Assembly (NCBI GenBank): GCA_976226885.1
Contig: OZ320315.1
Coordinates: 97,464,001 to 97,528,000 of the forward strand
Direction of reading: 5' to 3'
Length of the DNA stretch: 64,000 bases
DNA from: Iphione sp. A-MEVVRFRX5
Lineage: Eukaryota
Below, piece after piece: positions 1 through 53,907 of the stretch. The notes beneath the pieces are model-generated. The model did no database searches. It was not told the origin of the DNA and saw nothing but the letters and a program-made list of their open reading frames with translations. Position 1 is the first letter of the stretch; every line of letters starts with the position of its first letter. Position numbers and translations under genes: made by a program.

Positions 1-405
1 CGGCTAATTGCAGATACAAAACAAATTGACACTGTTGAAGTCATTATATATATTGCCTGACGTACTCACCTAGAATAGCAATCACAGTTGGCATTTTAAA
101 TATTTGGTTCGGCTAATTACAAGTATTGCACCAATACTCTCTTAATAAAGTGATCACAGTTGGCAGTTAAGATACTGGTGTTACACTCGTAATTTGGTCA
201 AATAGCACTAGGTGTATCCAGTATGGCTGAGGTGTCGGATGGTAACAGCCATCAAATCACAGGCACAATCGTGTAATAGGATATCCCAATATACTCTCTT
301 GCATGGGGTATCACAGATTGGTTGTCTACACACACACAATCACATTCCATTCATTCATAGCCCCATTCACACTACATACTCAATTACACAAACAGTTATA
401 CATAC

Positions 406-3258
406 TCATCTCATACCATTTTTCCATCTACGCCAGTCGCACTCTTTTAGCACCTTACCCAACTTTACCTGGTTTGGAAGTTCACTCCAACTTGCTACCC
501 CTCTGTATCTCAATGATCTAGCAAATCTCATCGAGCGGGGCCTGCACACTTTCCCTCGCGTTCTGCTACCCATTCGTGTTTTGGTACCCAATCCCTTCGG
601 TAGGAGCTCCAACCGCATCAGCTTGTGCACTACCGCAGTCCCCCTATATTCGATCATGTCGAAGACCCTGTCCATACCTAGCCTCCGTTGTAGATTTGTA
701 GCACTCTGACCATCCTTAGTGATCAGTGCAGCTCTCACACAACGGTTTAGAGTGATCTGTAGCTTCACTTTGTTCGAGTAGCTAACCCCGAACAACAGCC
801 CAGCTGTGTAAACCAGATGAGTTAGCACTAGTGCTCTGAATAGCATTAGCCTCACATGAAGGGGTACCCAATGTTTTATTCTGGCAATCTGCGTAGACGC
901 TCTCCACATTTTGGCCGACGTGTTGCGGATCGCACCACCGTAGTCGAGTTTTGAATCAATGTCAAACCCCAGGAGTTTTACATTGGTTGATGCCGCTAGT
1001 TTAGTTTCGCCTATTTTCAAATCAAGGTCGAGACCAGTGGCAGTACCAAGGGGCATGTGTACGCATTTAGTAGAGCTTAGTAGGAGACCGTTGTCGCTGC
1101 ACCAATTTACAACGGAGTCAAGAGCTCGTGCCGCTTGGCTTCTCAATCGCATAAGGTCCCGCGCATGCACCAGGACAGTTAGATCATCTGCATAAAGCAC
1201 CGCTGATGCTTGGTTGGGGAGCACAGCTGTAACTGAGTCCACTACAAGGTTAAAACCTAACGGGCCAAACACCGACCCTTGCGGTACCCCATGGCAGACC
1301 ACTCTTTTGCTCGACTCGCTGTCGCCACACCTGACAAACTGACTCCTATCAGTGAGGTAGCTACTGATCATTGCCAGTAAGTTTTTACCACCCCCCACCA
1401 TCCGCAGCCGATAGAGTACATTGTCCCTGCTCACTAAGTCAAAGGCTTTTTTTAGATCGAATAAAAGCCAACATACGTACTCTTTTTGGTTAATCAGCTC
1501 TTGTGTGTCACATACGAGCTTTGCGGCCGCTGTTTCTGTACTGAACCCCTCCCTGAAGCCGTGTTGCATCATGCTGAGACTACTTTGCCGGGTCAAGTTG
1601 TTATTGATTTCCTGGCAGAACCACTTCTCACACAACTTACCAGGGAGGGGCAGTATCGACACAGGACGGTAGTTTGTCAAGTTGTTGGGGTCCCCTCCTT
1701 TGTGAATTGGACAAACCCGTGCCGTTTTCCATGCTCTGGGATATCGTCCTGTAGCATAAATCTGCTCAAATGTCCATGAAAGGAATGCTGCATGTCTAAG
1801 AAGAATTGGCTTGAGGATCCTAGTTGGGATCCCACTGAGCCCGGATGATTTTTCTATGGACACCCTCTGGACAATTTTCCTGACTTCATCAGGAGTCGGT
1901 GGGCGGATATCAAAGGTTTCGCCACGTGCGGTTGTTGATATATGCACTGGAGGTGTCCATGGCTGGCTTAACCTATCAACTGAGTCTACAAAATGGTTGT
2001 TAAATGCCTCTGCCACAGTTACTTCACTGCCCGCTTCCTCATTGACCGCGCTTGGTAGGACCATGCTCCCCTTATTCCTCCCGAGCATGTCATTTAATAC
2101 CCCCCAATTCTTTTTCATATCCCTCCCTGCCTTCTTCAGTTTCCGTTCCCAATACTCCTGTTTTTCCATCGATATTATTTTCTTGATTTCTCTATTCAAG
2201 AATTTATATATCCGATGACTATCCTCACATCCTTCACTCCTCCAGCGTTTCATGAAGTATTCCCTGTCAGCTATTACTTCCCTTGCACCTGCGCTTAGTT
2301 TGAAACCGTCCCTTGACTCCCGGACCACAACTGTTCTTGGAGGGCATGCCGCGTTTATTTCACCTCTTAGACTTTCTTCGAATGTTTCCCAAGCTTCTTC
2401 ATGATCCACCCTTATGACGTCAACAGTTTCCCCAAGGCGCCCCCCAATTTCAGACACATTCGCATTGTCCCACTTCCTGATCACCATTTCCCGTCTTATT
2501 TGACTGGTCGATCCTTTCTTTATTATTACCTCAACAGGCAGGTGGTCACTCATAGCCCATCCTCCGATACTTCCCCCCTTGTGGCCTCCAAAATTCACCC
2601 ATATGTGGTCCAGGCAATTTCCGCTTCCTACCATTGTTCCCCCTTCTATTAGTTGACTGTATCCCTTGCCCGCCAAAAGGCTCGCTATCCCACACCCCGC
2701 CTTCCCTGAGTCCCCATAATTGTAGTTAAAGTCCCCCAGAATCACTGTTTCTTGTTTGTAAGGGGCCCCCCTGGTAGTGACCACTTCGTCCAGGTACTTT
2801 ACACACTCTCCAACCTTATCTGAAGGTGGTCGGTAAACTAAGACAATTTTTAAGGGTCGTCGCTTACCACATTTAAGCGTCACACACAGTACCTCTGTAA
2901 TACTGCCCTTGGGTTCAGGCCTGTCCACACCAACTAAACGGAATGAGTCTCTGTAATAGACGAGCAGACCTCCTCCCTTCTTACCAGTCTGGGTAATCCT
3001 GTCCCTGCGAATAAGGTTATAACCACCCAATTTTAGGGTCCCATCTTCAGTCGAGTCCGTGAGCCAGCTTTCAGATAAGCAACAGACATCCACACTATCA
3101 CGCTCCATGCACTCATGCACCTCTGCTATCTTCCGACGTATACTCCTCACATTGAGGTGGACGACTTTCAGCCCCCTCATGTTCTCGCAGTCAGCCAAAG
3201 ACCAAATTTGTGAGCACACTCGATATAATACGTAAGCAAGAAAATGTCCAATGGTCAA
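406..3258 (-). CDS. LINE ORF2: apurinic endonuclease plus reverse transcriptase, uninterrupted 950 aa
   Basis: APE motifs HLNVRS, LSESWL, YRPP, GDFN, LDHIWV, SDHLPV. RT motifs YRPVSILPLPGK, QHGFR, DLKKAFD, GVPQGS.FGP, YADD, LLGF. The true start may be MRGLKVV at 3180. Confidence 0.97.
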   Translation of the reverse strand: MTIGHFLAYVLYRVCSQIWSLADCENMRGLKVVHLNVRSIRRKIAEVHECMERDSVDVCCLSESWLTDSTEDGTLKLGGYNLIRRDRITQTGKKGGGLLVYYRDSFRLVGVDRPEPKGSITEVLCVTLKCGKRRPLKIVLVYRPPSDKVGECVKYLDEVVTTRGAPYKQETVILGDFNYNYGDSGKAGCGIASLLAGKGYSQLIEGGTMVGSGNCLDHIWVNFGGHKGGSIGGWAMSDHLPVEVIIKKGSTSQIRREMVIRKWDNANVSEIGGRLGETVDVIRVDHEEAWETFEESLRGEINAACPPRTVVVRESRDGFKLSAGAREVIADREYFMKRWRSEGCEDSHRIYKFLNREIKKIISMEKQEYWERKLKKAGRDMKKNWGVLNDMLGRNKGSMVLPSAVNEEAGSEVTVAEAFNNHFVDSVDRLSQPWTPPVHISTTARGETFDIRPPTPDEVRKIVQRVSIEKSSGLSGIPTRILKPILLRHAAFLSWTFEQIYATGRYPRAWKTARVCPIHKGGDPNNLTNYRPVSILPLPGKLCEKWFCQEINNNLTRQSSLSMMQHGFREGFSTETAAAKLVCDTQELINQKEYVCWLLFDLKKAFDLVSRDNVLYRLRMVGGGKNLLAMISSYLTDRSQFVRCGDSESSKRVVCHGVPQGSVFGPLGFNLVVDSVTAVLPNQASAVLYADDLTVLVHARDLMRLRSQAARALDSVVNWCSDNGLLLSSTKCVHMPLGTATGLDLDLKIGETKLAASTNVKLLGFDIDSKLDYGGAIRNTSAKMWRASTQIARIKHWVPLHVRLMLFRALVLTHLVYTAGLLFGVSYSNKVKLQITLNRCVRAALITKDGQSATNLQRRLGMDRVFDMIEYRGTAVVHKLMRLELLPKGLGTKTRMGSRTRGKVCRPRSMRFARSLRYRGVASWSELPNQVKLGKVLKECDWRRWKNGMR

Positions 3259-3418
3259 TATACTATTTGAGTGGTGGTGTAGTAAGAAAGTAGTGGAATA
3301 TTGCTATTAAAGTCTGTGCCCGGACTAAATATAGTCAGATGATTATCAACAGGGCAACGGTGGACACACTATGGATCTAATCAGATTGTCCGATGAACAT
3401 CCATATATGGGGTAGTAT

Positions 3419-3645
3419 AAGTAAACTGTCGGTACACAATACACATATGCAAGAATAGTACAGAATACACAAGTGGATAATAACACAGAACAGAACACAC
3501 TAGCGGATAATAAGCACGGAAAATGATCATCCACATATAGGGTGGTCTAAGTTAACTGTCGGTACACAATACACATATGCAAGAATAGTACAGAATACAC
3601 AAATGGATAATAACACAGAACAGAACACACAAGCGGATAATAGTC
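3419..3645. repeat. Tandem duplication, 130-bp period, in the SGNH-ORF2 spacer
   Basis: ACTGTCGGTACACAATACACATATGCAAGAATAGTACAGAATACAC occurs at 3425 and 3555. Confidence 0.92.
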
Positions 3646-3796
3646 ACGCAAAATTGATTGGATTGGTCTGCGTAGTGTGATTTTCCTGGTTGTAGATGAC
3701 ACAAGAGTTCAAGGATATCAGAGCAACGTTTCTGGATCAGAGTCCCTTGATCTATACTACTAGAACGTGCTATTGATGAAACGATCTGACAGTTAC

Positions 3797-3833
3797 CTGG
3801 CGCTCTCCCTGGGATAACAGCTAACAACTAATA
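3797..3833. promoter_or_regulatory. Spacer segment complementary to the A1 5'UTR (partner 6240-6279)
   Basis: 3797-3809 CTGGCGCTCTCCC is the exact reverse complement of 6267-6279. Further helices: 3811-3814/6263-6266, 3815-3818/6256-6259, and 3824-3833/6240-6249 (two G:U). Confidence 0.6.
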
Positions 3834-3904
3834 ATACTGGCACATATAGATAGCAAGTTAGCAGATCTATTTAGCTAACGGAATCACGGTCAAGATTTCC
3901 CTGC

Positions 3905-4592
3905 TTAATCGATGTTCACGATATGGAGGTGTCCATATTCACGTATGAAATCCACAATTAATACCTCTAATGCAAACGACCATTCACCTACCACCTGGTG
4001 TGAGCTGGTCTGCCTTCAATAGGGAAAAGTCATTTGTCGTGACACCCCCGTTATAGGTGGTGATCGGGGCACTAAGGTCACATGGGTGCATGCCGTACCT
4101 CACTGCTGACGAGCAGCACTGCAGGTAGTGGATATATGCGGCAGCTTCCATTAGGTACTGCTCAGCGTCGTCTGTGCAGTCCGGCGAAATCACTGAGAAG
4201 TCCATCACAGGTGATGGACAGTGGACTACGGCTGGGGGTGCCGTAGCTGTATCCGACAAGACGCTCTCGATGGCATCCATGTACCACTTCACACGCTCGC
4301 TGTATGCTGCCGGGGATCCTGTGTTGACGGACCATTGGCCCGTCTCGTACTTGACCCAATCGAAGATACCTATTGCTGTAATCACGAGATGGTATCCGCT
4401 GACGTTGTAGGTCTGCAACCAAGCCAAAAGCCTCTTATATGATGCCTTTGGGATAGTCACGACGTCGACACGAGTGGGTGGAACGGAGTGTAGTTTATCT
4501 TTGAGCTGCAGCGCCGCAGGGGCCATACGCGAGTCAGTCAGCAGTAGCACTCTGGTTCGGTGACTTACATCGACTCGCGCTGGTTGCATCAT
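3905..4592 (-). pseudogene. SGNH/GDSL-hydrolase-like middle ORF of copy A1, one frameshift near 3995
   Basis: Block I-like VLLLTDSR and block III-like TAIGIFDW. After the frameshift the frame VVGEWSFALEVLIVDFIREYGHLH matches the A2 C-terminus VVVGEWTFAVQLMLSEYIQEYGHLH. Stop at 3905-3907. Confidence 0.75.
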
Positions 4593-4653
4593 TGAGGTAA
4601 CTGCGAGAGAGTAAATAACATAACCCTAAACGCTGAACGATAACATACGATCC

Positions 4654-6240
4654 TTAAGCGCTGGCAGTCGGCAAATCAGTACTAGAGGACCCAAATGAGA
4701 GAACTTCATTTCTGATTTTCACCAGCATCTTCCCTAGCAAGTTTTTACCAACGTAGCCGTTTGACCCACTTAAGGCACGTACGGTCGAGCCCGTACCGAG
4801 AATCGGGTCATTGTCAACATACACAATCTCTGATACATTACTGCGACTGAGCTTCAATCGTGCAGCCTCATTGTTTAGAAGCATTATCGACACAACTTTC
4901 CTGACCGTTACCTCTGAATTGGCCTCCCATTCTGCTGTCGAAACTATTCTGTCTCCGATTCGCTTGGCACCTTCGCCGCTCCTTGCTTTTTGAACCCTGT
5001 GTTCTGCTTCACGGTCACCGCACATGCGCGATTTGATATATTGCAGGGCGTGTTCGGGAGTTTCATAGTAGATCCCGTCCAACTTCATTGGGGTACTTTG
5101 TTGCAAAGAAAAGCAAGCGTCGTCTTTGTCGAATAATAAATTATTCCTGTCGTCGCAATCATGACTCATAATTGTGTTCTGGATCAAGTTGTTGTCATCT
5201 GGTTCGAATCTTTTACCGTCAACCACTAAGTCAATGCCACTTACGAATGCGCTGTGACCTCGTTTCCTAGCTTTTGCCGCCAGCCGCTGCTGTTTCGCAT
5301 GTAAATCAGCGGCGATCCGAGGGATATCTTCATTAATGTAGATTTGTCGATAATCTTTGAGTTTTGCTAGTACCGATCTTTTCCTGAGCAGTAGGTTCCG
5401 TGCCTCAATCGAAGTTAATAAGACGCCCACCTTTAGTTTGCCATTAATGTTGGAAAAGACGGCTGTATCCTCTATTTCGTGAGGCTTGATGCCCGCAAGT
5501 GTGTTCACCATCCTCACAATAAATGACTTGATGGATTTTTCCTCACTCGCAGGAATCCCAGTTAATACCACCTTCCTGCACCTGTCGTTGATCTCCAGAC
5601 GCATTAGATCATATTTAGTAGACATGCAGCTTTTCGAGAGATGTGATAATTGTAACTCGATGCTATCAATTTTGCTCGCAAGATCTCCGTTAACGACACT
5701 GTCATCCACCCTCCGGGTCGATTTCCCTGGTGAAATCGATGATCGTAGACTGGCAAGTTCAGCTCTAATACTTGCAAACTCAGACTTGAATTCACTGCGG
5801 ATAGCGTTAAGAACGCCTTGCCACTTACTGTTGTTTTCAGCCAAGATGTGGTCGGTGTTAGGCGCGGGAGACAGCGGCCTCCCCTCCTCCAAGTCAACGT
5901 GTATGTCTTGGTGCCCATCCGATCGAACGTTGATCCCAGCATTCTTTGTAACAGTGTCGACTCCCCCGTTATCTTTTTCAACATGAAGTGAATCCACGTT
6001 CGTATTATCACCGACCGTTTCAACGTTTGGAGTAGTTGGTTCGGTCCTGCTAGCAACTGGCGTACTCTTGTTGGTCAAGGTTGTTGTGACTGAATTATCG
6101 CTCACTGGCTCTTTGTTCTCAACATTTTCAACCGATTTGCAATCAAAACTCTCTTCAAGGCATGGTGCAGACGCCGATCTAAGCAACATTTTACTTGTAT
6201 TCGCCCGTGGAGTAGGCAGCTTTTGCGATCTTCTGCCCAT
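4654..6240 (-). CDS. LINE ORF1 (coiled coil plus L1-type RRM/CTD) with C-terminal NADAR domain, 528 aa
   Basis: Heptad region; RCRKVVLTGIPA; IYINEDIP. Then a YbiA-like block: DGIYYETPEHALQYIKS, AKRIGDRI, EWEANS, DNDPILGTG, GKNLLGKMLVKIRNEV. Confidence 0.88.
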   Translation of the reverse strand: MGRRSQKLPTPRANTSKMLLRSASAPCLEESFDCKSVENVENKEPVSDNSVTTTLTNKSTPVASRTEPTTPNVETVGDNTNVDSLHVEKDNGGVDTVTKNAGINVRSDGHQDIHVDLEEGRPLSPAPNTDHILAENNSKWQGVLNAIRSEFKSEFASIRAELASLRSSISPGKSTRRVDDSVVNGDLASKIDSIELQLSHLSKSCMSTKYDLMRLEINDRCRKVVLTGIPASEEKSIKSFIVRMVNTLAGIKPHEIEDTAVFSNINGKLKVGVLLTSIEARNLLLRKRSVLAKLKDYRQIYINEDIPRIAADLHAKQQRLAAKARKRGHSAFVSGIDLVVDGKRFEPDDNNLIQNTIMSHDCDDRNNLLFDKDDACFSLQQSTPMKLDGIYYETPEHALQYIKSRMCGDREAEHRVQKARSGEGAKRIGDRIVSTAEWEANSEVTVRKVVSIMLLNNEAARLKLSRSNVSEIVYVDNDPILGTGSTVRALSGSNGYVGKNLLGKMLVKIRNEVLSFGSSSTDLPTASA

Positions 6241-6399
6241 ATTAGCCGTAAACGCGTTATATTCCCGGGAGAGCGCCAGCGTACGTCCTACCCCGTTCGT
6301 GCCATAAGAATGAAACTGCCGATCCCCGAAAGCAACACGTACTTCAAGGTTCCTAGGGTAAATGCTCGTTTGAAGATGGGGTACAGAACAAAAACAAAG

Positions 6400-18169: not shown

Positions 18170-18775
18170 TCAACAATACAGTTTGTGGAGGAACTTCTTG
18201 TATTCTTCCACCATCAGTCTCCTGCCGACCACTCCAAAATGGCAGCCATCAGATAATTGACTCAGTTTGTTCACCTGATGCCGGTTCACTTTGGTATGCA
18301 CAATGGAACCAATGAACGGTGTGGGCTGATTATTTCCTCTGTTGAAGCAAAAGATAAATGCATTAATTTTGTGCATGGCTCGGTTAATCACTTTTTGTTC
18401 CCTATTGAACTTACTTTTGTCTAGTAAGGTATGTGATAAATGTTCATTATATCGACATATATCTATACCAACAAATTGTGAAAAAATGATAAAACCGCTT
18501 CTGAAATGATCGTTTAACTTGTCATAGCATGTACTGATTATGAGAGTCAGTCTGTCACTTATCAACATCGGGTCCTCGTCAGGTAGATTGACCTGCCTTC
18601 CACTCTTATTTGTTATGTCACATATTCCAGCCTGTATTATTATATACAGTGGAGTTTTTTCTGTCAGCACAGATATCCCTTTCCCAGGAAAGCAGTGAAC
18701 CTTGATGGCGACACCCATTCTCCAGAGGTCTCCTTCCAGTAGACCTGCAATTGAATCTGAAAACACGTGACTGGT
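18170..18775 (-). CDS. SGNH-hydrolase-like ORF of copy B1
   Basis: VFSDS (block I), VHCFPGKG, IIIQAGICDIT (block III), LSDGCHFG (block V D-x-x-H). No ATG before the motifs; in frame with the NADAR stop codon. Confidence 0.75.
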   Translation of the reverse strand, partial: TSHVFSDSIAGLLEGDLWRMGVAIKVHCFPGKGISVLTEKTPLYIIIQAGICDITNKSGRQVNLPDEDPMLISDRLTLIISTCYDKLNDHFRSGFIIFSQFVGIDICRYNEHLSHTLLDKSKFNREQKVINRAMHKINAFIFCFNRGNNQPTPFIGSIVHTKVNRHQVNKLSQLSDGCHFGVVGRRLMVEEYKKFLHKLYC

Positions 18776-20510
18776 TCATGTCGAATTGTCAGCGGGCACT
18801 GGTGTTCTCCCTGCTAGCTCACTCCTAATTGTGCAAAGCATTTTGCCCAGCTCATTTCTACCAGGAAACTCCCCTGTCAAAATGCCTGTCGACTTCACAT
18901 TTACACCTGCCCCCCAGAATTGGTTTTTGACCGCTTGCACCAAAGACAATTCACCAGTTCTCAACAGGGCCACTCGCATACCCTTGTTCTGGTTATATTT
19001 AGCACAGAGTATGTTTTTCAATAGGGACAACCGGTCTTCATGAGTCAGTGTTGAGTCAATTAGCATACCCTTCCGTAGTAGTGCTGATGGCTCCTCGATA
19101 GCTATGAGTTCTAGCACCAGTTTATTATTCTTGATCATTTTTGCTTGTTGTTTTTGCTAAGAACGCCTGCTCTGCACTCGTGTACAACGTGTCATTTTAA
19201 GTCAATGGGCAGCGATATATGGTACTCAATGGGTGGTTGCGACCATGAAAGCCAAGTGTGCTGTCCGATCTATTTTCAGCCGCTCTTTCGAGTGAGAGAC
19301 CAGCTGGTAAGTTTTTGAGTGTTCTTGTGGTATACACACTACTGTTTACTACTAATTTGTCACCGTCTAATTTTGACGTATAGTTCAAGGACTAAGACAA
19401 ATGGTGGACACTACGTAATTCGGCTCGATTAATCCTCTCTGGTCCAGTCAAATCGTCATTCAACAATATCCCCCGTCTTTCTCGTAGATTTCCCCTTCCT
19501 TGCATGATTGCAATTTTAGAGGACTGTCTGGTCATTTGGACTAATGTCCCTCACCTTCCCTTCTCTTTTCATACTCAATCTGTAGATCATGTCTATGTCT
19601 GTTTTCGTCATGGTCGGGCATGCTAATTGAAACAATTCCATCACCCTTGTGTTTAATCTTTCAAAGTTTTCACCTCCTCCTTCTAGCAACCCTGAGATAA
19701 TGATATTCGAGCTCCTCTGCTGTTTTTCTAGCCTTATGTGACTGTTCTCCCTCTCGTTTACTTTCTGGGTTAATTTCCCGAACTTGATGGAATTAATACC
19801 TCTCATTGTTTTCAAGCTCTCTACAGTTGCTCGTAGTTCCTTATTCTCTCTTTCTAGCGAGTCGACCATTGTTAGAATGTCATTCTGATCGCTTTTAATT
19901 GAACTAATTAGTTCAGTGTTCTCCTGATAGTAACCTGAAGGGATTCTAATATACTCTTTGTCTCAGTCACATGCTTCTGTAGTATCTCTTCCAATTTTGT
20001 CACTATCTGTTTCATTTCCCCACTTATTTCTTGCATCAGACCGTGATTCAATAACGACATTGGTTCTTCCTCTGTCGATGTTGTCTGTAAGCTCTGTAAA
20101 AATTTGAAAATGGTTGCTTGAACTATTTTGGGAGAATGTTCAGTAAGCTGAATGCTCTTTTTGTGTCCTTCTCTTCCTCATTAGGTGACCTATCCTTTCT
20201 TTTCTTACTTTCTTCATCAATGGTTTGGTCTAATGGCTGTGACTGCTCTACACCTGTATCTACAATACTATCCCTGTATGGTACTGATTTTGTATCATTA
20301 GCTATAGGTGTCTGTGAAATAGTTTATATGTGTGTATATGTTGCTAGGGCCACCTAACATATGTGCACTCATATACGGAGTATGAACTGCATAATTCATG
20401 TGTGCCGGGGGTGGCTGTTGTTGTGCCATTGTTGGTGTAGTCATGACCGCATTCACATACCCACTAGCCGTTGCTGGCGACAGGTCTATAATTAGATTGG
20501 GGTCTGACAT
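18776..20510 (-). pseudogene. ORF1-NADAR of copy B1 (frameshifted)
   Basis: HPLSTIY...LYTSAEQAFLAK (19150-19230); AKYNQNKGMRVALLRTGELSLVQAVKNQFWGAG...PGRNELGKMLCTIRSEL (18776-19138). Confidence 0.88.
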
Positions 20511-23025: not shown

Positions 23026-23027
23026 TT

Positions 23028-23180
23028 AAGAGAATACGTGGACATGGTGAAAATACAAATGGCCGTACGAGTTGAGTATGGGAATAATTTTTGAACGAGG
23101 CCGCAGGCCGAGTTCAAAAATTATTCCCATACTCAACGAGTCGGCCGTTTGTATTTTCATCTTGTCCACGTATTCTTTTT
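23028..23180. repeat. Long imperfect palindrome at the Crypton terminus
   Basis: About 75-bp arms around a GCA loop; perfect 26-bp core GTTGAGTATGGGAATAATTTTTGAAC. Confidence 0.93.
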
Positions 23181-23550
23181 ATTATACGGCCTTATTTCAT
23201 TACATCTATTGCATTTCTTACCTTGCAATTGGCGTTCACTGTTGTTTTCGCTGCCATTTTGTATTTTAACAGGAAGTGCGTAATATGAATTTCCGGTTTA
23301 CGGCACTCTGGTTTTTTTTTAGCATTTTAAGTTAATATCCAAGTATAAAGAAACAAATTTGATAAAAAACGTGTTTATTTGTATTTTCAAGAATTCCAAC
23401 ACATGAATTTTCTTATAATGTGGTACTTCTTGAAGGACTCTTTTTTAACGAACTATCGTTTCAAAAGTGGTTATGGTTAATAGCATAACTGCAAGTGCGC
23501 ACATGGACTTGTGCATTTTTTCAACGTTCCGAAATGTGGATATTGTTGAT

Positions 23551-25665: not shown

Positions 25666-25809
25666 TATCCTGGAAGAACGCACGGCTTGCACTGCATATT
25701 TCTACTATTTTCCAGCAGGAGGCGCTGCCGCGGTAGTGCCGTACAATATGGATTACTGAACCCCCCTGCGAGTGCATTAATTTTACCCTGTATCAGCATT
25801 GCCGTATAA

Positions 25810-31490: not shown

Positions 31491-32504
31491 TTTGCCATCT
31501 CTGGCCATCTTGGCCATCAATGCCAAACCATAGGAAGGGGCAGTGTTATTGCGATAACTTATGAACCGTTGGTCCTATGTGCACGAAATTTCGTGTGCGT
31601 GCTTCTGAGACCCATGCGCAAGTTTTTCAGAACAAAGGACTCTGAGGCCTGAGGTCTTCTGACATGGTGTCTCCCGCACTCGACCCCGGCGAAAGCGTAA
31701 CCACTGTTTCGGCATAACTTTGCCGCAAATTGTTGTATTGACTTTATTTTTGGAACGTACGTAGCCCCGGATAGGGTGGATGTGCACACTAATTTTAAGA
31801 GCAATCGAAGCATATTAGCAGGACTTATGGCCGAGGGACCATAACAAAGTGGTCATAGTCCCAGAGGGAGTCTACTCGCAGGTCTGTGCCGCGTCTTCGG
31901 CTGCACCTCCGGGGGGATGGTACAAACATTTTCAGGTGCCTCCACCCACGTCCGCTTTCCCATGACGTCACAGGACTCGGGAGCCCGTGGGAGACCCCGT
32001 ATTGGGGTTGGCCTTTGTACCTGCGTGCGCATCCGTACGGAGCTACGACTTTGTGGGAACATAGTGTGTAAGTTGTGTGTACTTTTCCCAAAGTTTGGGC
32101 GGGCTGCGGCCATTTTGGATTTTTGCTCCAAAGTTATTCAGAGTGTTCCCGGAGCGGTCCGGGAGCACTGCGGGCCAGTGATGCTACCAGTATGTTACCA
32201 TGTTCAGCTTCGACATTCCCCAGGAAGGCCAGGGTGTGTCGGAAGGGGGGGTTATTCTCATAGAGAACATACCCCTAGGCAAAATGTGAATATGCCAGGA
32301 CTGTATTTGGCCAGAAGGAGAGCCTCGTACAACCCTTACATACTCAAGGTGTCCCCCCTCTCTCAGCATCAGCTGAGGGAGGAGAGGACAGACTAGGTCA
32401 CGAGGAGCGTTGGGACACGTCCGCACGCTCCAAGCAACAAGCACAGAATGGCTAGATTGCGCACAGCTCATCCCTTGGATGACGTCACTGACCACGTGAT
32501 TAAT

Positions 32505-32680
32505 TCATGTTGCGATGCAATATCTGCAATCTGCAATAAATCCTTGCCGGGAAAAAAGTGCACATTCACCAAGAAGTGTTCCCGCCATAGATCGTAGTCT
32601 ACATTTCTCCCATGAGAATCAGTAAAAATATACTGATCGCTTGGGTTAGTCACGGACCTCACGAATAAGTGCCATTTCAA
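32505..32680 (-). pseudogene. N-terminus of the SGNH-like ORF of copy B2, cut by the DIRS element
   Basis: YIFTDSHGR...VHFFPGKDL, homologous to B1 VFSDS...VHCFPGKG. Confidence 0.7.
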
Positions 32681-34310
32681 TCAACACTCCGCGTGTGTGT
32701 TACTGTTCTTTGAACAATGACGAGCGGAGCAAGTAGATGCCCTAGCTGGTTGGTACCAATATAGGTGCCGTTTTCAATGTCAGGTGACCTTAGGCCACAC
32801 CCAGCATCCCAGAAACTGTCCTGAGTTGCCTCTATCAACATTTGATAATCCGTTTCCAACAGTTTGTCGGTGAGGTAGTTGTTCTGCTCAAATTTTTCTC
32901 GAACGCCCACCCTATGAACCTTCCAACTATCATCCATAACAATACCTGCTGCCTTGGCTTTTATGTGGATGGGGTCACGCAGTTGAAATAGCTCAGTAAG
33001 TTTGTGACCATCCTTCATATGCATTGCTTTGGCTACTGCAAAAGCTTGTTCGGCGCAATTGAATTTATTTCCCTTCCATACAAATTCACAGGGAAGGAAG
33101 GATGATGCATCCCATTGAAAGCTAGGCCTACTTCAGTAATTACCTCGGACGCACTCTCCAATGAGAGATTTGAGGGGAGCTTATGTAATGAGGTACTTGT
33201 ATATGTTTGGCCCTTTATAATTAGCCGGTCATTCTCCAATTTGGCAGTAATCCCCAGAGATTTTGCTCTTTGAAAGACCAATCATAGGTCGTTCCTTGAT
33301 GATTGGTCAATTGATGTCAGATCATCATTTAACCAGACTCCCTTTGTATTCTTCAATTTTGATTTATTGCATATGATATCTTGTTTGGTAGAAGTTTTCA
33401 CAAAGCTAACCAGAATGTCCTTGTGCTTACCCTCTCTCTTTGGCCCTAGTCTGAAGCATAAATCTATCGCAGTACCGATTATTGTGGGGACCGGAATGTT
33501 CGGAATTGCGATCACTTTTCTAATCAAATCATTATGATTTTTCCTGATCAGACTCGTTAATTCCGGCAATTATAATGTTATTCTTCCTCTGAATTTCGTT
33601 CCCTTTCCATATCATTTGCATCACAAGACGTAAGTCGTTCCTTTACAAAGTTTAGTTCACACCTATGCGATTTTGAGTCTCCCTTGAGAATCTCTATTTC
33701 TGCACGTAGCTTGGCTATCGATGCGCTGCAAAAACATGGAGGTTTCTCCTGTGCTGCATTCATCTGTTTACGTAAGTCAGAGATATCCTGGGCATTAGTC
33801 TTTGTTTGGTTCTCAAGCTGTTTAACAAGTGCAGTGGTTTCTCGATTACTCTGTTTAATTGTTTCTGGTCACTTACGTAAGTTTTTGTTTCAATCGAGGC
33901 AGTCATGGTTGTTAGCGTCTGTGCGATAGCACTCATTTGGTTCACAAGACCTACAAAGTCCGAACCAAATTTTATTGGTTGAGAGTCATCTTGGTTTATT
34001 TCATCCTCGCCCTTATTTTTCTTGGGAAGAGGGAAAGTAGGTGGTGAGCCATGGTCACGTTTTTGATTTTCCAGTGTTGGACATCCCTGACTGGTTAATA
34101 GTCCCACCCACTAGATGATCATGTACAATTTTGGGGGCTAGAGTGATCATGAACCAATTCGAGGGGCATATTACCAGTATTCCACGTGATTGTGTCAATA
34201 AGGTTTGCTGTGATATTGTCCATAGGTAATAAGTTCACTTTGTCGTCAGGGTCTGTTACTTTCAAAATCGATTGAGGAGTGGAACACAGCAGTTGTATGG
34301 TGGATAGCAT
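32677..34310 (-). pseudogene. ORF1-NADAR of copy B2 (several stops and frameshifts)
   Basis: IDLCFRLGPKREG and VWLNDDLT (L1-type RRM/CTD); FNCAEQAFAVAKA; EKFEQNNYLTDKLLET...EATQDSFWDAG...GTNQLGHLL. Confidence 0.88.
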
Positions 34311-49139: not shown

Positions 49140-51884
49140 GCTCAAGTACACATACTATCAGGTACCCTTTTGCTAAGCTTTACACTCAGAGGTAGGGCAT
49201 TCCATTTTACAGTGCCTTTTTGGCGGAATGACTTAGCATACATTGCACTGGTTGGTTTGCTCACCACTCCACATAGTCTGTCCAAGCCTTGTCATCGTCT
49301 TGGCTTTGGAGGGTATGAGCCCAAGACTCATCAGCCTATGCGTACATTGCATGCCTCTCACAGCAATTATCTCCTCAATCCTAGGAACATTGAATCTATC
49401 ATGTAGTACACGAGCAGGCAAGTAGTTTCTTACCTGAAGGCAAACTCTGGCACATTTATGTATGAAGGATTGTAACCTAATTCTCTGTGATACACTGATA
49501 GCATACAACATAACAGCATGATATTTGACATGCGCTAGTACTAGTGACGCAAATAATTGTTTCCTAGCTGAGATTGGTAGTAGGTGCTTGGCCCTGCCAA
49601 CATGTAAAGCTGCCAGCCACATCTTCTTTTTAGGGCTTTGATTGTTTGGTTACACTTCAACTGACTGTCCCCGGAGTAGCCTAGAAGAGTGCAGTTTGGA
49701 ACCATTTGCATTGGTTCACCATCTAAAGTTAGATCCAAATCAGCTCCTGCTGCTCTACCCACCTGCAGGTAGGAACACTTAGAGATACTCAAGACTAGTC
49801 CTGTTTTGTGACTCCATTCAGACACGGCACGGATTACCTGCGAGCAGCGATCTCGAAGGCGGAGCAGATCCCTAGCACCAATAGTTATTGACAGATCATC
49901 AGCATAAATGGTCGGTTTACAGAACTTTGGCAAGTGTTGGACTATATCATTGATGACTAAAATGAAAGCGTAAGGCCCAACGATTGAACCTTGAGGCACA
50001 CCATGCTTTACAGGTTTAATTGACGAGACTTCTCCCCGACACTTTACTCTCTGGTACCTGTCGTTGAGATAACTACTGAAGAAACCCCTTGTCTTATGAC
50101 CAACCCCAAGTTTCGCTAGTTCAGATAATATTTTGCCATGTGGGATTACGTCAAAGGCCTTTTTAAAATCAAACATTAATATTGTGGTATATAGCCCTTG
50201 ATTGCAATATTCCTGAGCGTCACCTATGATTGTCATGATAGCAGTTTCAGTAGATCTTAAACCCCGGAAACCATGTTGTGCCATATGTAGCAGTCCCTGT
50301 GACTCAATCCAACCCATCATCTTTCCCATCATCCATCTTCCCAGGAAGTGGGAGTATGGTAATTGGACGGTAGTTTGCAATGTCCTCTTTGCTCCCTTTC
50401 TTGTACACCGGTGTTACCCTCCCCTGTTTCCATGACATAGGGAATGAGCTAGCTAATATGCAATTGACAAACACCCAGGTTAAGAAGGCATGGAATCTAA
50501 TTAGGACAGGTTTTAAGATTTTGGTAGGGACACCATCTATTCCAGAGGGTTTTGTTGTCTTTTGTTTCTTGATCAGATCCACTATCTCTCTTGATTCTGG
50601 AATAGGAAGCTCAAATTGTTGATCAGTCATACTATTGACACATTCATGCTCTATTCTTGTGTCATCTACTAGCTTGTCAACCTCACTAATGAAGAAATTG
50701 TTGAAGGAGTCAGTTAGTTCCTTATTCCCATTAATATTACTCCCTGCACTAGGTAAGATGTCCTTATTACCTGCTCTTCCCGTCGCCTCATTAAGCACCG
50801 CCCATGTTCTTCTGGAATCACCATGTGCATCACTAAGTCTACTCTGCCACCATACCCTCCTTTCTGATTTTAAGGCCTTCTTCACTTTCTTGTCAAGATA
50901 CTTGTAAATTCTCAGGTCATCCAATGTACGGTACTTTCTCCATTTTTTGAAGAAATATTCCCTATCTTTATGCAGGCTATTTAGCCCAGCACTAGGTTCA
51001 AAGTTGTTTCTATCCAGCCTCACCTTTCTACTTTTTTCGGGGCAAGACAATGCCAGTTCTTCTTTTAATCTAGCCTCAAATTCATCCCATCTCTGCACAT
51101 GATCTCCTTCCATTATGCCAACTCCACTACTTTCTAGGGTTTCACATAAGTCAGGCACATCTACCTTTCCCCATTCCCTGTAGTTCTTAGTTTCAGACCT
51201 ACAGAAGCCCCCACCTTTCTTTATTGTGACGGATATCGGGAGATGATCACTCAGGTGCAGAGAACCTACTTCAGACCCCCTATGGTCATCAAAGTTCACC
51301 CATAGGTGATCAAGGCATCCCTCAGAATCGATCATAGTGGAATCTGTTACCAACTGCCTCATCCCTCTCCCATGTAGGTAGTTAGCCGCCCCTAACCCCA
51401 CTTTGCATGTATTTGAGAAATGGTAATTGAAATCCCCCCAAACCACCCTGTCACTTCGTCTCAGATTGAAAAAGTCTTTCATAGCATAGTCAATAGCTGA
51501 CACAGAGTCCGATGCCTTGTCACCTGGCGGCCTGTATACACAGAGCAGTTCAATTGGACGTCTCATTCCTGCCTTTAGTTTTATTCCTAAGATTTCTGTC
51601 GATGAGTCTGCAACTGTTAATACTCTACTGTCCAGCACAGTGTAATGTGACCTATAATAAATAATGAGTCCACCCCCCTTTTTCTTGCTAGTTGGGGACC
51701 TGTCTGCCCTGACTGTACTGTACCCTGGGATATAAACGCTGCTATCCAAGTGATTACTTGATAGCCAACTCTAAGTTATCCCACAAATGTAAACACCCTC
51801 TTTATAGAGATAATCAGCTAGACAGTTTTTCTTCTTAGCTATACTCCTTATGTTGTAGAACATTATCTTGGCACCAGGGGCCAT
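49140..51884 (-). pseudogene. ORF2 APE-RT of copy A2 (one stop, about 3 frameshifts)
   Basis: MAPGAKIMFYNIRS (ATG at 51884), YRPP, GDFN, SDHLPI, YRPITILPLP, QHGFR, DFKKAFD, GVPQGS, YADD. Confidence 0.93.
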
Positions 51885-52550
51885 TTCGAAGATGATAGGG
51901 ATAACAGGACTGAGGTAGTTAACACAGAGTCAGTATCACAGTTAGCAGTGAATGTTTGGTAGATAATGACCAAACCTTATATGAACACAATGTAAGCCAG
52001 TAGTTCAATATATAAAAAGAAGAGATAGAGTATGGAAAACAATTAAGGAAGAGAAATTTACACGGCTTCGATAACCATTGAACAAACTGACTAGTATGAT
52101 ACACTGAGATAAATTATATGTGGGTAGAATAGTGCCTTGTGGGATAAATCGCACTTAGCACTCAACATTTACACAGATATATGCGAATTGCTGTATGCAG
52201 ATAAATCAAGAAAGCTTCGATTTAACTAACAACTTGGATATATTCAAGTTTTAGCAATCATTGAATGTTGACCAATTGTTAGAGAACCACCACGCACTCA
52301 TAAAGATCGATTGAGTGTGAGAAAGAATACAAGTACAGAAACACCTGGGGTATTTCATCCACAATGACTTAGTAGAGTTGGTGGACACTGTGAGTAGTGG
52401 TATTGAGTTACAAACCTTAATTCACATACAATCTACTGGTACCAGACTGTACACAGATAAGAGATTATGCCAAAGATTCAAGTTAGTTGTGTACGTAAGT
52501 ACTGGTTGTCAGTGCACTATGTCTATGCGTTCTATAAGTGCTCTCTGTCC

Positions 52551-52569
52551 GTGCTCCCCCGGCAACATC
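52551..52569. promoter_or_regulatory. Spacer segment complementary to the A2 5'UTR (partner 55743-55761)
   Basis: GTGCTCCCCCGGCAACATC vs the minus-strand UTR GTGCTCTCCCGGCGACATC: 17/19 identical, and both differences give G:U pairs in the element RNA. Confidence 0.65.
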
Positions 52570-53090
52570 CAGCACCCAAGATGGAAAAAAGAAATCCTCC
52601 TGATTAAATCACAGAAAAACTCTCATGAGTAAATCAAAAAGTAATGATATGTTTCTTAAACACCAGTCTAAATGACCTCCTGACTAAATCATACAGTTAA
52701 AGGTAAGTGTATTAAATATGTGTATGTACCGTCAATATTACGCAACCAAACTATATACCATTAACACATAAATAAACACAGGTCTCACCCAAGGTAGGGG
52801 CAAAATATTACAACACGATACATAAGTAGAATATTAGGTAGATAATGTAATAGAAGAGGTATATAAAGATCCTGGTAATATTCATTGCAAGCGCACCACC
52901 AATTTTTGGCACTTAACATAAGTATATCTGAGGTAACATGCTAGGATACTATTGACTCTCAGATAATCTAGCAAGATATAAGCTTAATACCAGCGGTGTA
53001 CACAGACTAGTGCCATATTCATTGTGCTCACCCAACTGGTTGTTGGTATTTCTGTTGTTGCAGGCACAAATTACCCAATCCAAGGACATC

Positions 53091-53780: not shown

Positions 53781-53907
53781 CTTCGAAGCTGAAACACATC
53801 CAATGTACATGGTTCTAGCAAGCATCATTACTCAGAAAACATTAGCTAGAGTGAGATGATACACGATCTATTGCATGATATAGTGTGTATGGCACTAAAT
53901 CAGTAGT

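What the first reader, a model, noticed from the sequence alone, without database searches (positions are those of the whole stretch)
406..6240. LINE retrotransposons carrying a NADAR (ADP-ribose/N-glycosidase) domain on ORF1 plus a separate SGNH module
Seen: four copies (4654-6240, 18776-20510, 32677-34310, 53908-55724) have an L1-type coiled-coil/RRM ORF1 ending in a YbiA-like block (E-H/Q motif, W, D/N-x-x-x-G, G-x-N-x-L-G-x-x-L-x-x-x-R). Each is followed by an SGNH-like frame and, where preserved, APE-RT. The copies form two very divergent lineages, so the layout is old and maintained, not a one-off capture. Established: NADAR enzymes include E. coli YbiA (riboflavin-intermediate N-glycosidase) and the antitoxins that remove DarT1 ADP-ribose from guanine in ssDNA. 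Guanine-specific DNA ADP-ribosyltransferases exist in animals (pierisins, clam CARP-1). Esterase, PHD and RRM domains are known in LINE ORF1; I do not recall NADAR being described there, but cannot check. Inference: a retroelement-encoded eraser that protects RNP RNA or TPRT ssDNA from host ADP-ribosylation, i.e. a candidate counter-defence system.
Basis: partly seen in the sequence, partly recalled or inferred. Interest (0 to 1): 0.9.

Follow-up and report, generated by a model that had tools for sequence, protein, structure and literature searches.

The report
LINEs carrying NADAR and SGNH modules
Four copies of an old group of jumping genes (LINE retrotransposons) carry a genuine NADAR domain, an enzyme type that strips ADP-ribose from DNA/RNA bases, on their RNA-packaging protein, plus a separate esterase-fold gene; both are kept by selection, but three of the four copies belong to lineages that have lost key catalytic residues, the fusion was already noted in oyster LINEs in 2025, and its function is untested.

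Summary
Copy 1 (minus strand, 406-6305) is a three-ORF LINE.
- ORF1p has a disordered N-terminus, coiled coil, RRM, CTD (L1 ORF1p fold) and a C-terminal NADAR domain (Pfam 55.8 bits; YbiA/NADAR fold).
- A stand-alone ORF has the SGNH-hydrolase fold (Z 14.9).
- ORF2 is APE-RT.

Copies 2-4 are decayed relatives from two lineages only about 20% identical.

The genome holds thousands of NADAR-ORF1 frames. In 59 of 60 sampled loci the SGNH-type ORF follows directly. NADAR and that ORF evolve at dN/dS of about 0.02-0.34, like the RRM.

- A 2025 paper (PMC12477816) already notes NADAR in ORF1 of oyster LINEs catalogued in Repbase, and this scan reported the fusion many times on other DNA of this genome.
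- The "eraser" role is untested, and catalytic residues are substituted. In the lineage of copies 1 and 4 the last-strand Glu is Tyr/Phe, the Trp is Leu, and the SGNH Ser/Asn/His are lost. Copy 2's family has Lys, Glu and Asp changed to Gln, Gln and Asn. Only copy 3's lineage, like most other sampled families, keeps the canonical site.

Verdict: a real, ancient, selected and barely described LINE design. Counter-defence remains a plausible hypothesis.

The parts
6241..6305 (-). Copy 1: 5' UTR. The 5' end of the element is at about 6305.
   Evidence: Similarity to the near-full-length family copies starts at query position 896 of window:1-7200:-. Alignment with the C1 copy agrees.
4654..6240 (-). 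Copy 1: intact ORF1 (528 aa), an L1-type ORF1p with a C-terminal NADAR domain.
   Evidence: ORF list. Pfam NADAR. AF2 model. Foldseek hits to YbiA 2b3w, NADAR 8bau and human L1 ORF1p 2yko.
5584..5853 (-). Copy 1 ORF1: coiled coil (residues about 130-219). Residues 1-134 upstream are predicted disordered.
   Evidence: AF2 helices 130-168 and 180-219; pLDDT below 50 for residues 6-134.
5206..5574 (-). Copy 1 ORF1: RRM-like domain (residues 223-304) and CTD (308-345).
   Evidence: beta-alpha-beta-beta-alpha-beta topology with pLDDT around 90. Foldseek 2yko E 1.1e-4, TMt 0.52, plus many RRMs.
4684..5142 (-). Copy 1 ORF1: NADAR domain (residues 367-519). It keeps E396 and K403. Y474 replaces the last-strand catalytic Glu and L481 replaces the Trp. 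D476 and D478 are conserved.
   Evidence: Pfam 55.8 bits. Foldseek 2b3w TMt 0.70 and 8bau TMt 0.65. Residue mapping, with numbering from PMC11543638.
3984..4592 (-). Copy 1: middle ORF (202 aa) with an SGNH-hydrolase fold and no catalytic Ser/Asn/His. A frameshift cuts it about 30 codons before the normal end; the remainder reads in another frame down to about 3905.
   Evidence: Homologues are 231 aa. Frames. AF2 of the 93%-identical L003 copy gives pTM 0.78. Foldseek finds 91 SGNH/GDSL hits. VIA-align Z 14.9 to 1yzf.
3181..3904 (-). Copy 1: spacer of about 725 nt between the middle ORF and the first ATG of ORF2 (3180). No domain was found in it.
   Evidence: ORF list, frames. The most variable stretch among family copies falls here.
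406..3258 (-). Copy 1: ORF2, open throughout. The APE endonuclease is at about 2533-3156 and the reverse transcriptase at about 961-1704.
   Evidence: Pfam Exo_endo_phos E 3.8e-10 and RVT_1 E 1.7e-28.
1..405 (-). Copy 1: 3' UTR. It continues about 420 nt beyond the window start and ends in an (ACAAT)3-4 repeat.
   Evidence: Four family copies align up to that repeat and then diverge.
18812..20510 (-). Copy 2: decayed ORF1-NADAR with stops and frameshifts. It belongs to a family whose NADAR has Lys, Glu and Asp replaced by Gln, Gln and Asn.
   Evidence: tblastn with the intact relative L032. Pfam on 18776-19138. Frames. Alignment.
18170..18766 (-). Copy 2: middle ORF (198 aa) with the SGNH motifs DS..G and DGCH.
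   Evidence: It is 67% identical to the L032 middle ORF.
32722..34132 (-). Copy 3: decayed ORF1-NADAR of a family with the canonical catalytic motif (nearest relative L057).
   Evidence: tblastn. Pfam on 32677-33024. Alignment.
32495..32650 (-). Copy 3: 52-aa fragment of the middle ORF with its DS.G motif. The element is interrupted downstream.
   Evidence: tblastn at 67% identity to the L057 middle ORF. Alignment.
53973..55724 (-). Copy 4: ORF1-NADAR of copy 1's lineage. The NADAR is broken by an in-frame stop and a frameshift.
53091..53828 (-). Copy 4: middle ORF (245 aa), a pseudo-SGNH with Glu at the nucleophile position.
49281..51875 (-). Copy 4: ORF2 (APE-RT) in three frames.
   Evidence: Pfam. 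tblastn at 36-40% identity to copy 1 ORF2.

Best explanation
These are copies of an ancient, very diverse group of autonomous non-LTR retrotransposons (LINEs) with three genes.

Shown:
- ORF1p is an L1-type RNA-packaging protein (disordered N-terminus, trimer-type coiled coil, RRM, CTD) that ends in a NADAR domain.
- A stand-alone SGNH-fold protein follows it directly.
- An APE endonuclease/reverse transcriptase comes next.
- Both accessory modules are integral, selected parts of the element, not captured passengers.

Inferred:
- NADAR, tethered to the element's own RNA by ORF1p, most likely recognises ADP-ribose-type N-glycosidic adducts on the RNA, the cDNA or the nicked target.
- In families with the full E..K / E / W active site (copy 3's lineage and most other sampled families) it probably hydrolyses them.
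- In the lineage of copies 1 and 4, and in copy 2's family, the canonical catalytic residues are replaced while the domain stays under purifying selection. There it probably acts as a binding or scaffold module, or with altered chemistry.
- The pseudo-SGNH of copies 1 and 4 is likewise probably non-catalytic, as in the Oskar OSK domain.
- Whether the modification being read or erased is laid down by a host defence enzyme is not known.
For: Anatomy:
- Pfam NADAR, APE and RT.
- AF2 model of ORF1 with Foldseek hits to YbiA, P. nicotianae NADAR and the human L1 ORF1p trimer.
- A profile of 17 canonical LINE NADARs hits 8bau at E 5.5e-20 and 2b3w at E 3.3e-18.
- The middle ORF model is SGNH: 91 Foldseek hits and Z 14.9 over 177 residues.
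- The copy 2/3-type middle ORFs have invariant Ser, Gly, Gly and D-G-x-H. They align to GDSL-derived chains and, weakly, to the ZfL2-1 LINE esterase 4c1b.

Integral to the element:
- 59 of 60 sampled loci have the middle ORF directly 3' of ORF1-NADAR.
- 141 of the 150 best public matches cover the CC/RRM region through NADAR in one stretch.
- Public contigs show ORF1-NADAR next to APE-RT and next to a middle-ORF homologue.

Selection:
- NADAR dN/dS is 0.14-0.23 between families of copy 1's lineage and 0.02-0.10 in the other lineage, including the Gln/Gln/Asn family. The middle ORF gives 0.03-0.34.
- Copy 1 against its 94% relatives gives NADAR 0.23-0.25, against 0.5-0.8 for the disordered N-terminus.

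LINE behaviour:
- 5'-truncated copies, one of them 99% identical.
- A short tandem-repeat 3' end.

Active-site states: mapped.
Against: - No biochemical or expression data. No sequencing run could be listed.
- The catalytic substitutions argue against hydrolysis only by analogy with E. coli C7 and P. nicotianae NADAR mutants. The conserved Asp two residues after the Tyr/Phe (D476 in copy 1) could conceivably take over, as an Asp two residues away does in DarT1-linked NADARs.
- The RT clade was not resolved.
- The SGNH assignment in copy 1's lineage rests on a predicted structure (pLDDT 75).
- Pfam GDSL models do not reach significance on either lineage.
Confidence: 0.7

Rival explanations
1. 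ORF1p-NADAR is an active eraser that removes host-imposed ADP-ribose from guanine (or cytosine) in the LINE RNA or TPRT single-stranded DNA. It would be a retroelement counter-defence against host nucleic-acid ADP-ribosyltransferases such as CARP-1 or pierisin relatives.
For: - Canonical families keep E43, K50, E125 and W133 equivalents in at least 90% of 17 diverse families.
- All four NADAR families tested hydrolyse G-ADPr, and several hydrolyse C-ADPr, on DNA and RNA (PMC11125620; PMC12945103).
- CARP-1 homologues are reported mainly in Bivalvia.
- ESM Atlas look-alikes of these ORFs are from molluscs and annelids.
- Phage T4 uses an orphan NADAR against DarTG1 (PMC11825919).
- An oyster nidovirus also carries NADAR, YbiA-like and Macro domains.
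Against: - There is no evidence that any host ART targets LINE nucleic acids.
- No ART was found in this genome with PF03496 or PF01375; this is inconclusive because the controls were silent.
- The lineage at the finding's coordinates, and copy 2's family, lack key catalytic residues yet persist and stay under selection. Erasing therefore cannot be the universal selected function.
Confidence: 0.18
2. NADAR in these elements is mainly a non-catalytic ligand- or nucleic-acid-binding module that helps RNP assembly, localisation or regulation. The ligand could be ADP-ribose, NAD, NAD-capped or ADP-ribosylated RNA. Catalysis would be dispensable, and the canonical residues in many families would be retained for binding.
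For: - There were two separate losses of catalytic residues, with continued strong purifying selection and intact frames of 500-700 aa.
- The SGNH Ser/Asn/His were lost in parallel in copy 1's lineage.
- There is a precedent for a non-catalytic SGNH fold, Oskar, listed in PMC3905857.
Against: - 22 of the 23 sampled loci outside copy 1's lineage and copy 2's family keep the last-strand catalytic Glu, together with the first Glu, the Lys and the Trp. Near-invariance across families about 35% identical is most simply explained by catalysis.
Confidence: 0.3
3. NADAR processes an RNA-end or metabolite adduct unrelated to host defence.
For: - PMC12477816 suggests a role in processing the RNA intermediate.
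- The original prediction of the family linked it to NAD/ADP-ribose and RNA processing (cited).
- E. coli YbiA is a riboflavin-intermediate N-glycosidase.
Against: - Phosphate-linked ADP-ribose on DNA/RNA ends is listed as reversed by macrodomains, PARG and ARH3, not by NADARs (Table 1 of PMC12945103).
- A metabolic role gives no reason for tethering the enzyme to an RNA chaperone.
Confidence: 0.1
4. Artefact. The NADAR and SGNH frames are host gene fragments or chance ORFs lying next to LINEs, not parts of them.
For: - None beyond the lack of a significant Pfam GDSL hit.
Against: - Same order and spacing in 59 of 60 loci across families down to about 20% identity.
- ORF1 frames run uninterrupted from the coiled coil into NADAR.
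- Purifying selection.
- The same fusion in independent public assemblies.
Confidence: 0.01

Closest known systems
Tx1-classified LINE families of Crassostrea gigas in Repbase whose ORF1 carries a YbiA-family NADAR domain (noted in PMC12477816, Genome Biol 2025)
   Same: A LINE ORF1 protein with a YbiA-type NADAR domain in a lophotrochozoan. This is very probably the same group of elements.
   Different: - The paper gives one sentence and a supplementary alignment. It makes no mention of a separate SGNH ORF, of an L1-type CC-RRM-CTD, of selection, or of loss of catalytic residues.
- I could not compare sequences or confirm the Tx1 assignment. The RT motifs and the (ACAAT)n 3' end look more CR1/L2-like to me, but that is from memory and was not tested.
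Human/mammalian L1 ORF1p (type II ORF1: coiled coil, RRM, CTD; PDB 2yko)
   Same: The predicted fold of residues about 130-345 matches the L1 ORF1p trimer (Foldseek E 1.1e-4, TMt 0.52). Type II ORF1 is also known in the CR1, L2 and R1 clades (PMC4120745).
   Different: - No Pfam Transposase_22 hit.
- An extra 150-residue enzyme-fold domain follows the CTD.
Esterase (SGNH) ORF1p of CR1/L2/RTEX LINEs, e.g. ZfL2-1 (PDB 4c1b; PMC3905857), and the GDSL ORF3 of bdelloid Vesta/Athena retroelements (PMC5408684)
   Same: - A retroelement-encoded SGNH-fold protein upstream of pol.
- The copy 2/3-type ORFs keep Ser, Gly, (Asn) and Asp-x-x-His.
- There is a weak profile hit to 4c1b (E 0.044).
- Athena-L also carries GDSL derivatives without catalytic residues.
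   Different: - Here the esterase is a separate ORF with no coiled coil of its own. It sits between an RNA-binding type II ORF1 and ORF2, whereas esterase ORF1ps lack RNA-binding domains (PMC3905857).
- In copy 1's lineage the catalytic residues are gone.
NADAR superfamily enzymes: E. coli YbiA (2b3w), P. nicotianae NADAR (8bau), DarT1-linked NADAR antitoxins, phage T4 gp30.3
   Same: - Same fold and motifs (E-x6-K, last-strand Glu, D..W-G, G-x-N-x-L-G...R) in the canonical LINE families.
- As with the phage protein, it is an orphan NADAR carried by a genetic parasite.
   Different: - It is fused to an RNA chaperone and has no linked transferase.
- Copies 1 and 4 have Tyr/Phe for the Glu and Leu for the Trp.
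- Copy 2's family has Gln, Gln and Asn for Lys, Glu and Asp.
- Activity is untested.
Other genetic parasites with NADAR: an Ectocarpus Gypsy lineage with NADAR at the N-terminus of Pol (PMC12477816), and Pacific oyster nidovirus PONV1 (PMC12377751)
   Same: Independent recruitment of NADAR by retroelements and RNA viruses, one of them in a bivalve host.
   Different: Different element classes and a different position of the domain. The Ectocarpus domain looks bacterial in origin, according to that paper.

Membership tests
NADAR superfamily (Pfam PF08719) | Profile match above the curated cut-off (35.1 bits) | tested here: met
   Copy 1 scores 55.8 bits. The copy 2 piece scores 50.3 and the copy 3 piece 39.7. 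Copy 4's truncated ORF has no Pfam hit but is homologous to copy 1. In the genome, 150 of 150 scored loci are over the cut-off.
NADAR superfamily (Pfam PF08719) | YbiA-like fold | tested here: met
   Foldseek on the AF2 model: 2b3w E 4.4e-6, TMt 0.70; 8bau E 1.1e-5, TMt 0.65. pLDDT is about 90-95 over residues 380-480.
NADAR superfamily (Pfam PF08719) | First catalytic Glu and Lys seven residues later (E43/K50 of P. nicotianae; E88/K95 of E. coli C7) | tested here: met
   Copy 1 has E396 and K403; the Glu is invariant and the Lys at least 90% conserved in 17 families of its lineage. In copy 2's family the Lys is Gln.
YbiA family of NADARs | Catalytic Glu in the last beta-strand (E125 of P. nicotianae NADAR) | tested here: not met
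   It is Tyr/Phe in copies 1 and 4 and in every sampled ORF1 of their lineage that is intact through this strand. It is Gln in copy 2's family (7 loci). It is Glu in 22 of the 23 other sampled loci, including copy 3's nearest relative. The group as a whole is therefore YbiA-type, but three of the four window copies belong to lineages that lost the feature.
YbiA family of NADARs | Hydrolysis of ADP-ribosyl-guanine or N-glycosidase activity | not testable with these tools
   This needs a biochemical assay.
Type II (L1-like) ORF1p | Coiled coil followed by a single RRM and a CTD | tested here: met
   AF2 secondary structure and topology. Foldseek 2yko/2ykp/2ykq E 1e-4 to 2e-3. There is no Pfam Transposase_22 hit, so membership is at fold level only.
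SGNH/GDSL hydrolases | SGNH flavodoxin-like fold | tested here: met
   The model of the middle ORF from copy 1's family has pTM 0.78. Foldseek finds 91 hits at E<=1e-3 and all top hits are SGNH/GDSL. VIA-align gives Z 14.9, rmsd 3.3 over 177 residues to 1yzf, and all 50 top entries are SGNH.
SGNH/GDSL hydrolases | Catalytic Ser (block I), Gly (II), Asn (III) and Asp-x-x-His (V) | tested here: inconclusive
   The copy 2/3-type ORFs have invariant Ser, Gly, Gly and D-G-x-H, with Asn in most families. In copy 1's lineage the Ser position varies (S/T/M/G/C/E/A), Asn is Phe and His is Thr, so the feature is not met there.
SGNH/GDSL hydrolases | Sequence-profile match (Pfam Lipase_GDSL / Lipase_GDSL_2) | tested here: not met
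   The best E-values are 0.038 and 0.086, each in one of 22 members, and there is none for copy 1. A profile against PDB gives 5.8e-5 to a GDSL-derived design and 0.044 to the LINE esterase 4c1b.
APE-type non-LTR retrotransposon (LINE) | APE endonuclease and reverse transcriptase in one ORF, no LTRs, 5'-truncated copies | tested here: met
   Pfam. Family copies are truncated at query positions 4003-6779 while sharing the 3' end. The shared 3' terminus is (ACAAT)n. A target-site duplication was not evident.
Tx1 clade (Repbase class given to the oyster NADAR-ORF1 LINEs) | Placement of the RT within Tx1 in a reference phylogeny | not testable with these tools
   No labelled reference RT sequences were available. 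The nearest public ORF2s are only about 25% identical and unnamed. The PDB hits to L1 ORF2p and R2 are equally remote.

The most novel reading that the evidence does not exclude
In lophotrochozoans, base ADP-ribosylation of nucleic acids by CARP-1/pierisin-type transferases acts as an innate defence against retroelements and RNA viruses. On this reading LINEs (through ORF1p-NADAR) and an oyster nidovirus (NADAR plus Macro) carry erasers, an animal counterpart of the phage-DarTG conflict. The families that replaced the catalytic residues would have moved from erasing to sequestering or sensing the mark, possibly together with the co-degenerated SGNH partner.
Probability: 0.12. Interest if true: 0.85.

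Novelty: new variant of a known kind. Interest (0 to 1): 0.5.

Why it matters
- LINE ORF1 proteins are normally seen as RNA chaperones. Here an enzyme fold of the ADP-ribose world has been welded to one, has been kept by selection, and has been amplified to thousands of copies. That makes NADAR one of the commonest "enzyme" domains in this genome.
- Surveys that report NADAR genes in animals may therefore be counting transposon ORFs.
- If the canonical domains are active, retroelements would join phages as carriers of nucleic-acid de-ADP-ribosylases. That would point to base ADP-ribosylation as an animal anti-transposon mechanism.
- The natural series of canonical, Gln/Gln/Asn and Tyr/Leu variants is a ready-made set for separating binding from catalysis. 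Each comes with an intact or a degenerate SGNH partner.

Tried and rejected
- The search for homologous proteins with whole ORF1 and with a profile of 22 middle ORFs returned nothing. These are word-filter blanks, not evidence of absence, because the exhaustive HMMER search found thousands of ORF1-NADAR relatives.
- ORF2 search: only about 25%-identical unnamed proteins, so the clade could not be read from names. PDB phmmer is equally remote to L1 ORF2p and R2.
- Host ADP-ribosyltransferase search with PF03496 and PF01375 in the window's own genome: no hits, but the control genomes were silent too, so this is inconclusive.
- Complex prediction of the NADAR domain with the middle ORF: no verdict, and it is not used as evidence either way.
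- The look-up of sequencing runs: none was listed, so expression could not be examined and read laying was not used.
- Pfam on the middle ORFs: no significant GDSL hit.
- Local HMMs of the middle ORF against 199 public proteins and against loci L061-L064: no match. The 250-350-residue C-terminal extensions of some public ORF1-NADAR proteins are therefore not SGNH, and not all relatives carry the middle ORF.
- Target-site duplication for copy 1: none evident.
- The chance-ORF or host-gene explanation was considered and rejected on linkage and selection.

Full report
**Anatomy of copy 1**

On the minus strand, window 6305 to 1 and beyond, lies one LINE.
- A 65-nt 5' UTR precedes an intact 528-aa ORF1 (6240..4654).
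- After a 61-nt gap comes a 202-aa ORF (4592..3984).
- After a spacer of about 725 nt comes ORF2, open from 3258 to 406 with its first ATG at 3180.
- Pfam finds NADAR (PF08719, E 8.6e-15, 55.8 bits against a cut-off of 35.1) at ORF1 residues 377-512.
- Pfam finds Exo_endo_phos and RVT_1 in ORF2, and nothing in the middle ORF.
- Comparison with the rest of the genome puts the 5' end at about 6305.
- The 3' end lies about 420 nt beyond the window start, where four family copies share an (ACAAT)3-4 repeat and then diverge.
- The family is small, about eight copies. Three are near full length and several are 5'-truncated, one of them 99% identical. This is the usual LINE pattern and suggests recent activity.
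- Copy 1 is not fully intact. Its middle ORF shifts frame about 30 codons before the end seen in its relatives.

**The other three copies**

- Copy 4 (55724..49281) belongs to the same deep lineage as copy 1. Its ORF1 is about 30% identical. Its NADAR is broken by a stop and a frameshift, its middle ORF is open (245 aa) and its ORF2 is in pieces.
- Copies 2 (20510..18170) and 3 (34132..32495) belong to a second lineage, about 20% identical to the first in ORF1.
- Both are riddled with stops and frameshifts in ORF1, but their C-terminal pieces still hit Pfam NADAR (E 4.2e-13 and 7.5e-10).
- Copy 2 keeps an open middle ORF and has no ORF2 behind it. Copy 3 keeps only 52 residues of the middle ORF before it is interrupted.

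**ORF1 is L1-type plus NADAR**

An AlphaFold2 model was built on an alignment of 17 families of copy 1's lineage.
- Residues 1-134 are disordered.
- Two long helices span 130-219.
- A beta-alpha-beta-beta-alpha-beta domain spans 223-304, followed by a small sheet (CTD).
- A compact helical domain spans 367-519 with pLDDT of 90 or more.
- Foldseek against the PDB returns, in order, E. coli YbiA (2b3w, E 4.4e-6, TMt 0.70), P. nicotianae NADAR with ADP-ribose (8bau, TMt 0.65) and the human LINE-1 ORF1p trimer (2yko, E 1.1e-4), then RRMs.
- A profile of 17 canonical NADAR domains from the second lineage hits 8bau at E 5.5e-20 and 2b3w at E 3.3e-18.

**Active-site states**

- The structural and mutational work on NADARs (PMC11543638) names four key residues. 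They are E43 and K50 (E88/K95 in E. coli C7), the last-strand E125 that defines the YbiA family, and W133 and D130 at the pyrophosphate.
- The HMMER alignments map these residues onto E-x6-K and L-I-E-A-S-x-D-x-F-W-G.
- Copy 1's lineage: the first Glu is invariant and the Lys nearly so across the 17 full-length families aligned. Every ORF1 that is intact through the last strand has Tyr/Phe for the last-strand Glu and Leu (His in one) for the Trp. An Asp two residues further on is nearly invariant.
- Copy 2's family (7 loci): Lys, Glu and Asp have become Gln, Gln and Asn, and the Trp is kept.
- The remaining 23 loci sampled from the second lineage: 22 keep the Glu, one has Ala, and all keep the Trp. 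Copy 3's nearest relative is among them.
- Three of the four window copies therefore come from lineages that lack a canonical NADAR active site.

**The middle ORF is SGNH-fold**

- A model of the 231-aa protein of copy 1's family (pLDDT 75, pTM 0.78) matches 91 PDB chains at E<=1e-3. All the top matches are SGNH/GDSL hydrolases.
- VIA-align gives Z 14.9 (rmsd 3.3, 177 residues) to 1yzf, and all 50 top entries are SGNH.
- The second-lineage ORFs have an invariant Ser in x-D-S-x-G, invariant Gly in blocks II and III, G-x-N-D in most families, and invariant D-G-x-H.
- Their profile aligns blocks III and V to GDSL-derived chains (E 5.8e-5). It also weakly touches 4c1b, the esterase of the zebrafish ZfL2-1 LINE (E 0.044).
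- hhalign links the two lineages' ORFs over 181 columns (E 2.4e-4, probability 44%).
- That alignment shows what copy 1's lineage lost. The nucleophile position is S/T/M/G/C/E/A, the Asn is Phe and the His is Thr.
- Pfam GDSL models do not reach significance.

**Linkage, abundance and selection**

- Searching the window's own genome (1.18 Gb) gave 3937 first-look candidates with copy 1 ORF1, 3137 with copy 2's NADAR piece and 4416 with Pfam NADAR.
- Every scored locus was significant, and most lie in open frames of 500-700 aa.
- In 59 of 60 fetched loci a homologue of the middle ORF starts within a few dozen bases of the ORF1 stop.
- Nei-Gojobori dN/dS values are listed below.

| Comparison | NADAR | Neighbouring region | Middle ORF |
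|---|---|---|---|
| Between families, copy 1's lineage | 0.14-0.23 | CC-RRM 0.17-0.28 | 0.13-0.34 |
| Between families, second lineage (includes the Gln/Gln/Asn family, NADAR 0.06-0.09) | 0.02-0.10 | n/a | 0.03-0.14 |
| Copy 1 against its 94% relatives | 0.23-0.25 | disordered N-terminus 0.5-0.8 | 0.15-0.20 |

- Many deeper pairs are saturated at synonymous sites.
- Both modules, degenerate or not, are under constraint as strong as that on the RRM.

**Outside this genome**

- An exhaustive HMMER search of 1.84 billion representatives with the ORF1 profile found 4972 proteins at E<=1e-3 and 933 at E<=1e-10.
- For 141 of the best 150, one alignment runs from the coiled-coil/RRM region through NADAR. 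Ten that were checked have strong Pfam NADAR hits.
- One ENA scaffold has ORF1-NADAR (811 aa) followed by APE-RT. A 5-Mb contig has two tandem ORF1-NADAR genes before APE-RT. Neither has a middle ORF.
- A Logan contig has ORF1-NADAR followed at once by a 234-aa middle-ORF homologue (E 1e-37) with the Ser and D-G-C-H motifs.
- ESM Atlas look-alikes are eukaryotic, with Annelida and Mollusca the commonest recorded phyla. These are leads only.

**Literature**

- PMC12477816 (2025) reports NADAR at the N-terminus of Pol in an Ectocarpus Gypsy lineage. [quoted passage not shown] No other paper in the library joins NADAR and ORF1.
- Type II ORF1 occurs in the L1, CR1, L2 and R1 clades. Esterase ORF1 occurs in CR1, L2 and RTEX (PMC4120745, PMC3905857, PMC5408684). 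There the esterase replaces, rather than accompanies, an RNA-binding ORF1.
- NADARs of all families reverse G-ADPr, and several reverse C-ADPr, on DNA and RNA. CARP-1 homologues are mainly found in bivalves (PMC12945103). An oyster nidovirus carries NADAR, YbiA-like and Macro domains (PMC12377751).
- This scan's earlier notes on other DNA of the same genome reached much the same conclusions. I re-derived them independently. I differ from one note, which could not confirm the SGNH fold.

**Interpretation**

- Shown: the architecture, its age, its copy number and its selection.
- Inferred: what NADAR does.
- The near-invariance of the four key residues across most families argues for catalysis on an ADP-ribose-type N-glycoside, carried out on the element's own nucleic acids because the enzyme is tethered by ORF1p.
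- The two separate losses with continued constraint argue that binding or scaffolding alone can suffice.
- The parallel degeneration of the SGNH partner in copy 1's lineage hints that the two modules work together. It is a single event, however, and the complex prediction gave no verdict.
- The counter-defence idea is biologically plausible and testable, but nothing here supports it directly.

**Not resolved**

- The RT clade.
- Expression.
- Presence of host nucleic-acid ADP-ribosyltransferases.
- Active-site geometry in the model.

Noticed in passing
window 26964-31500 (minus strand): A GC-rich block (0.56-0.59) carries long ORFs: a gag-like 355 aa, a 479-aa ORF whose sequence reads like RT/RNase H, and a 394-aa ORF that reads like a tyrosine recombinase. 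It looks like a DIRS/Ngaro-type retroelement. It sits between copy 3's middle-ORF fragment (32495) and LINE RT fragments at 26399-25809, so it may be nested in copy 3.
   Followed up: no
window 22273-26399: LINE RT fragments (ORF2 residues 493-689 at 26399-25809 and 689-939 at 23025-22273) are split exactly at residue 689 by about 2.8 kb of foreign DNA. An earlier scan note reads this DNA as a Crypton inserted in the YADD codons.
   Followed up: partly
window 56468-56998 and 58311-59771 (minus strand): Further LINE ORF2 remnants, 28-33% identical to copy 1 ORF2. No ORF1-NADAR or middle ORF was detected upstream at E<1e-5.
   Followed up: no
G000:C22:27636416-27636865: One NADAR locus scores far above all the others (176 bits against 109 or less) in a 329-aa frame. 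It may be the host's own NADAR gene rather than a LINE ORF1.
   Followed up: no
window 1-170 and beyond the window start: The 3' UTR of copy 1's family is about 0.8 kb long. It contains imperfect direct repeats of about 85 nt (the words ccaactgtgat...aattagcc recur) and ends in (ACAAT)3-4 rather than poly(A).
   Followed up: partly
window 3181-3904: There is an unusually long spacer of about 725 nt between the middle ORF and the ORF2 start codon. It is also the stretch that differs most among family copies (pieces break at query 3678-4003). How ORF2 is translated is unclear.
   Followed up: no
public proteins P0047, P0058; locus L062: P0047 (1075 aa) consists of five tandem NADAR domains. P0058 (4240 aa) has seven matched stretches. 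L062 carries two identical 664-aa ORF1-NADAR genes 2.8 kb apart, upstream of one APE-RT.
   Followed up: no
public proteins P0049, P0055, P0067, P0071, P0081: Several public ORF1-NADAR proteins continue for 250-350 residues after NADAR. This extension matches neither Pfam nor the middle-ORF profiles.
   Followed up: partly
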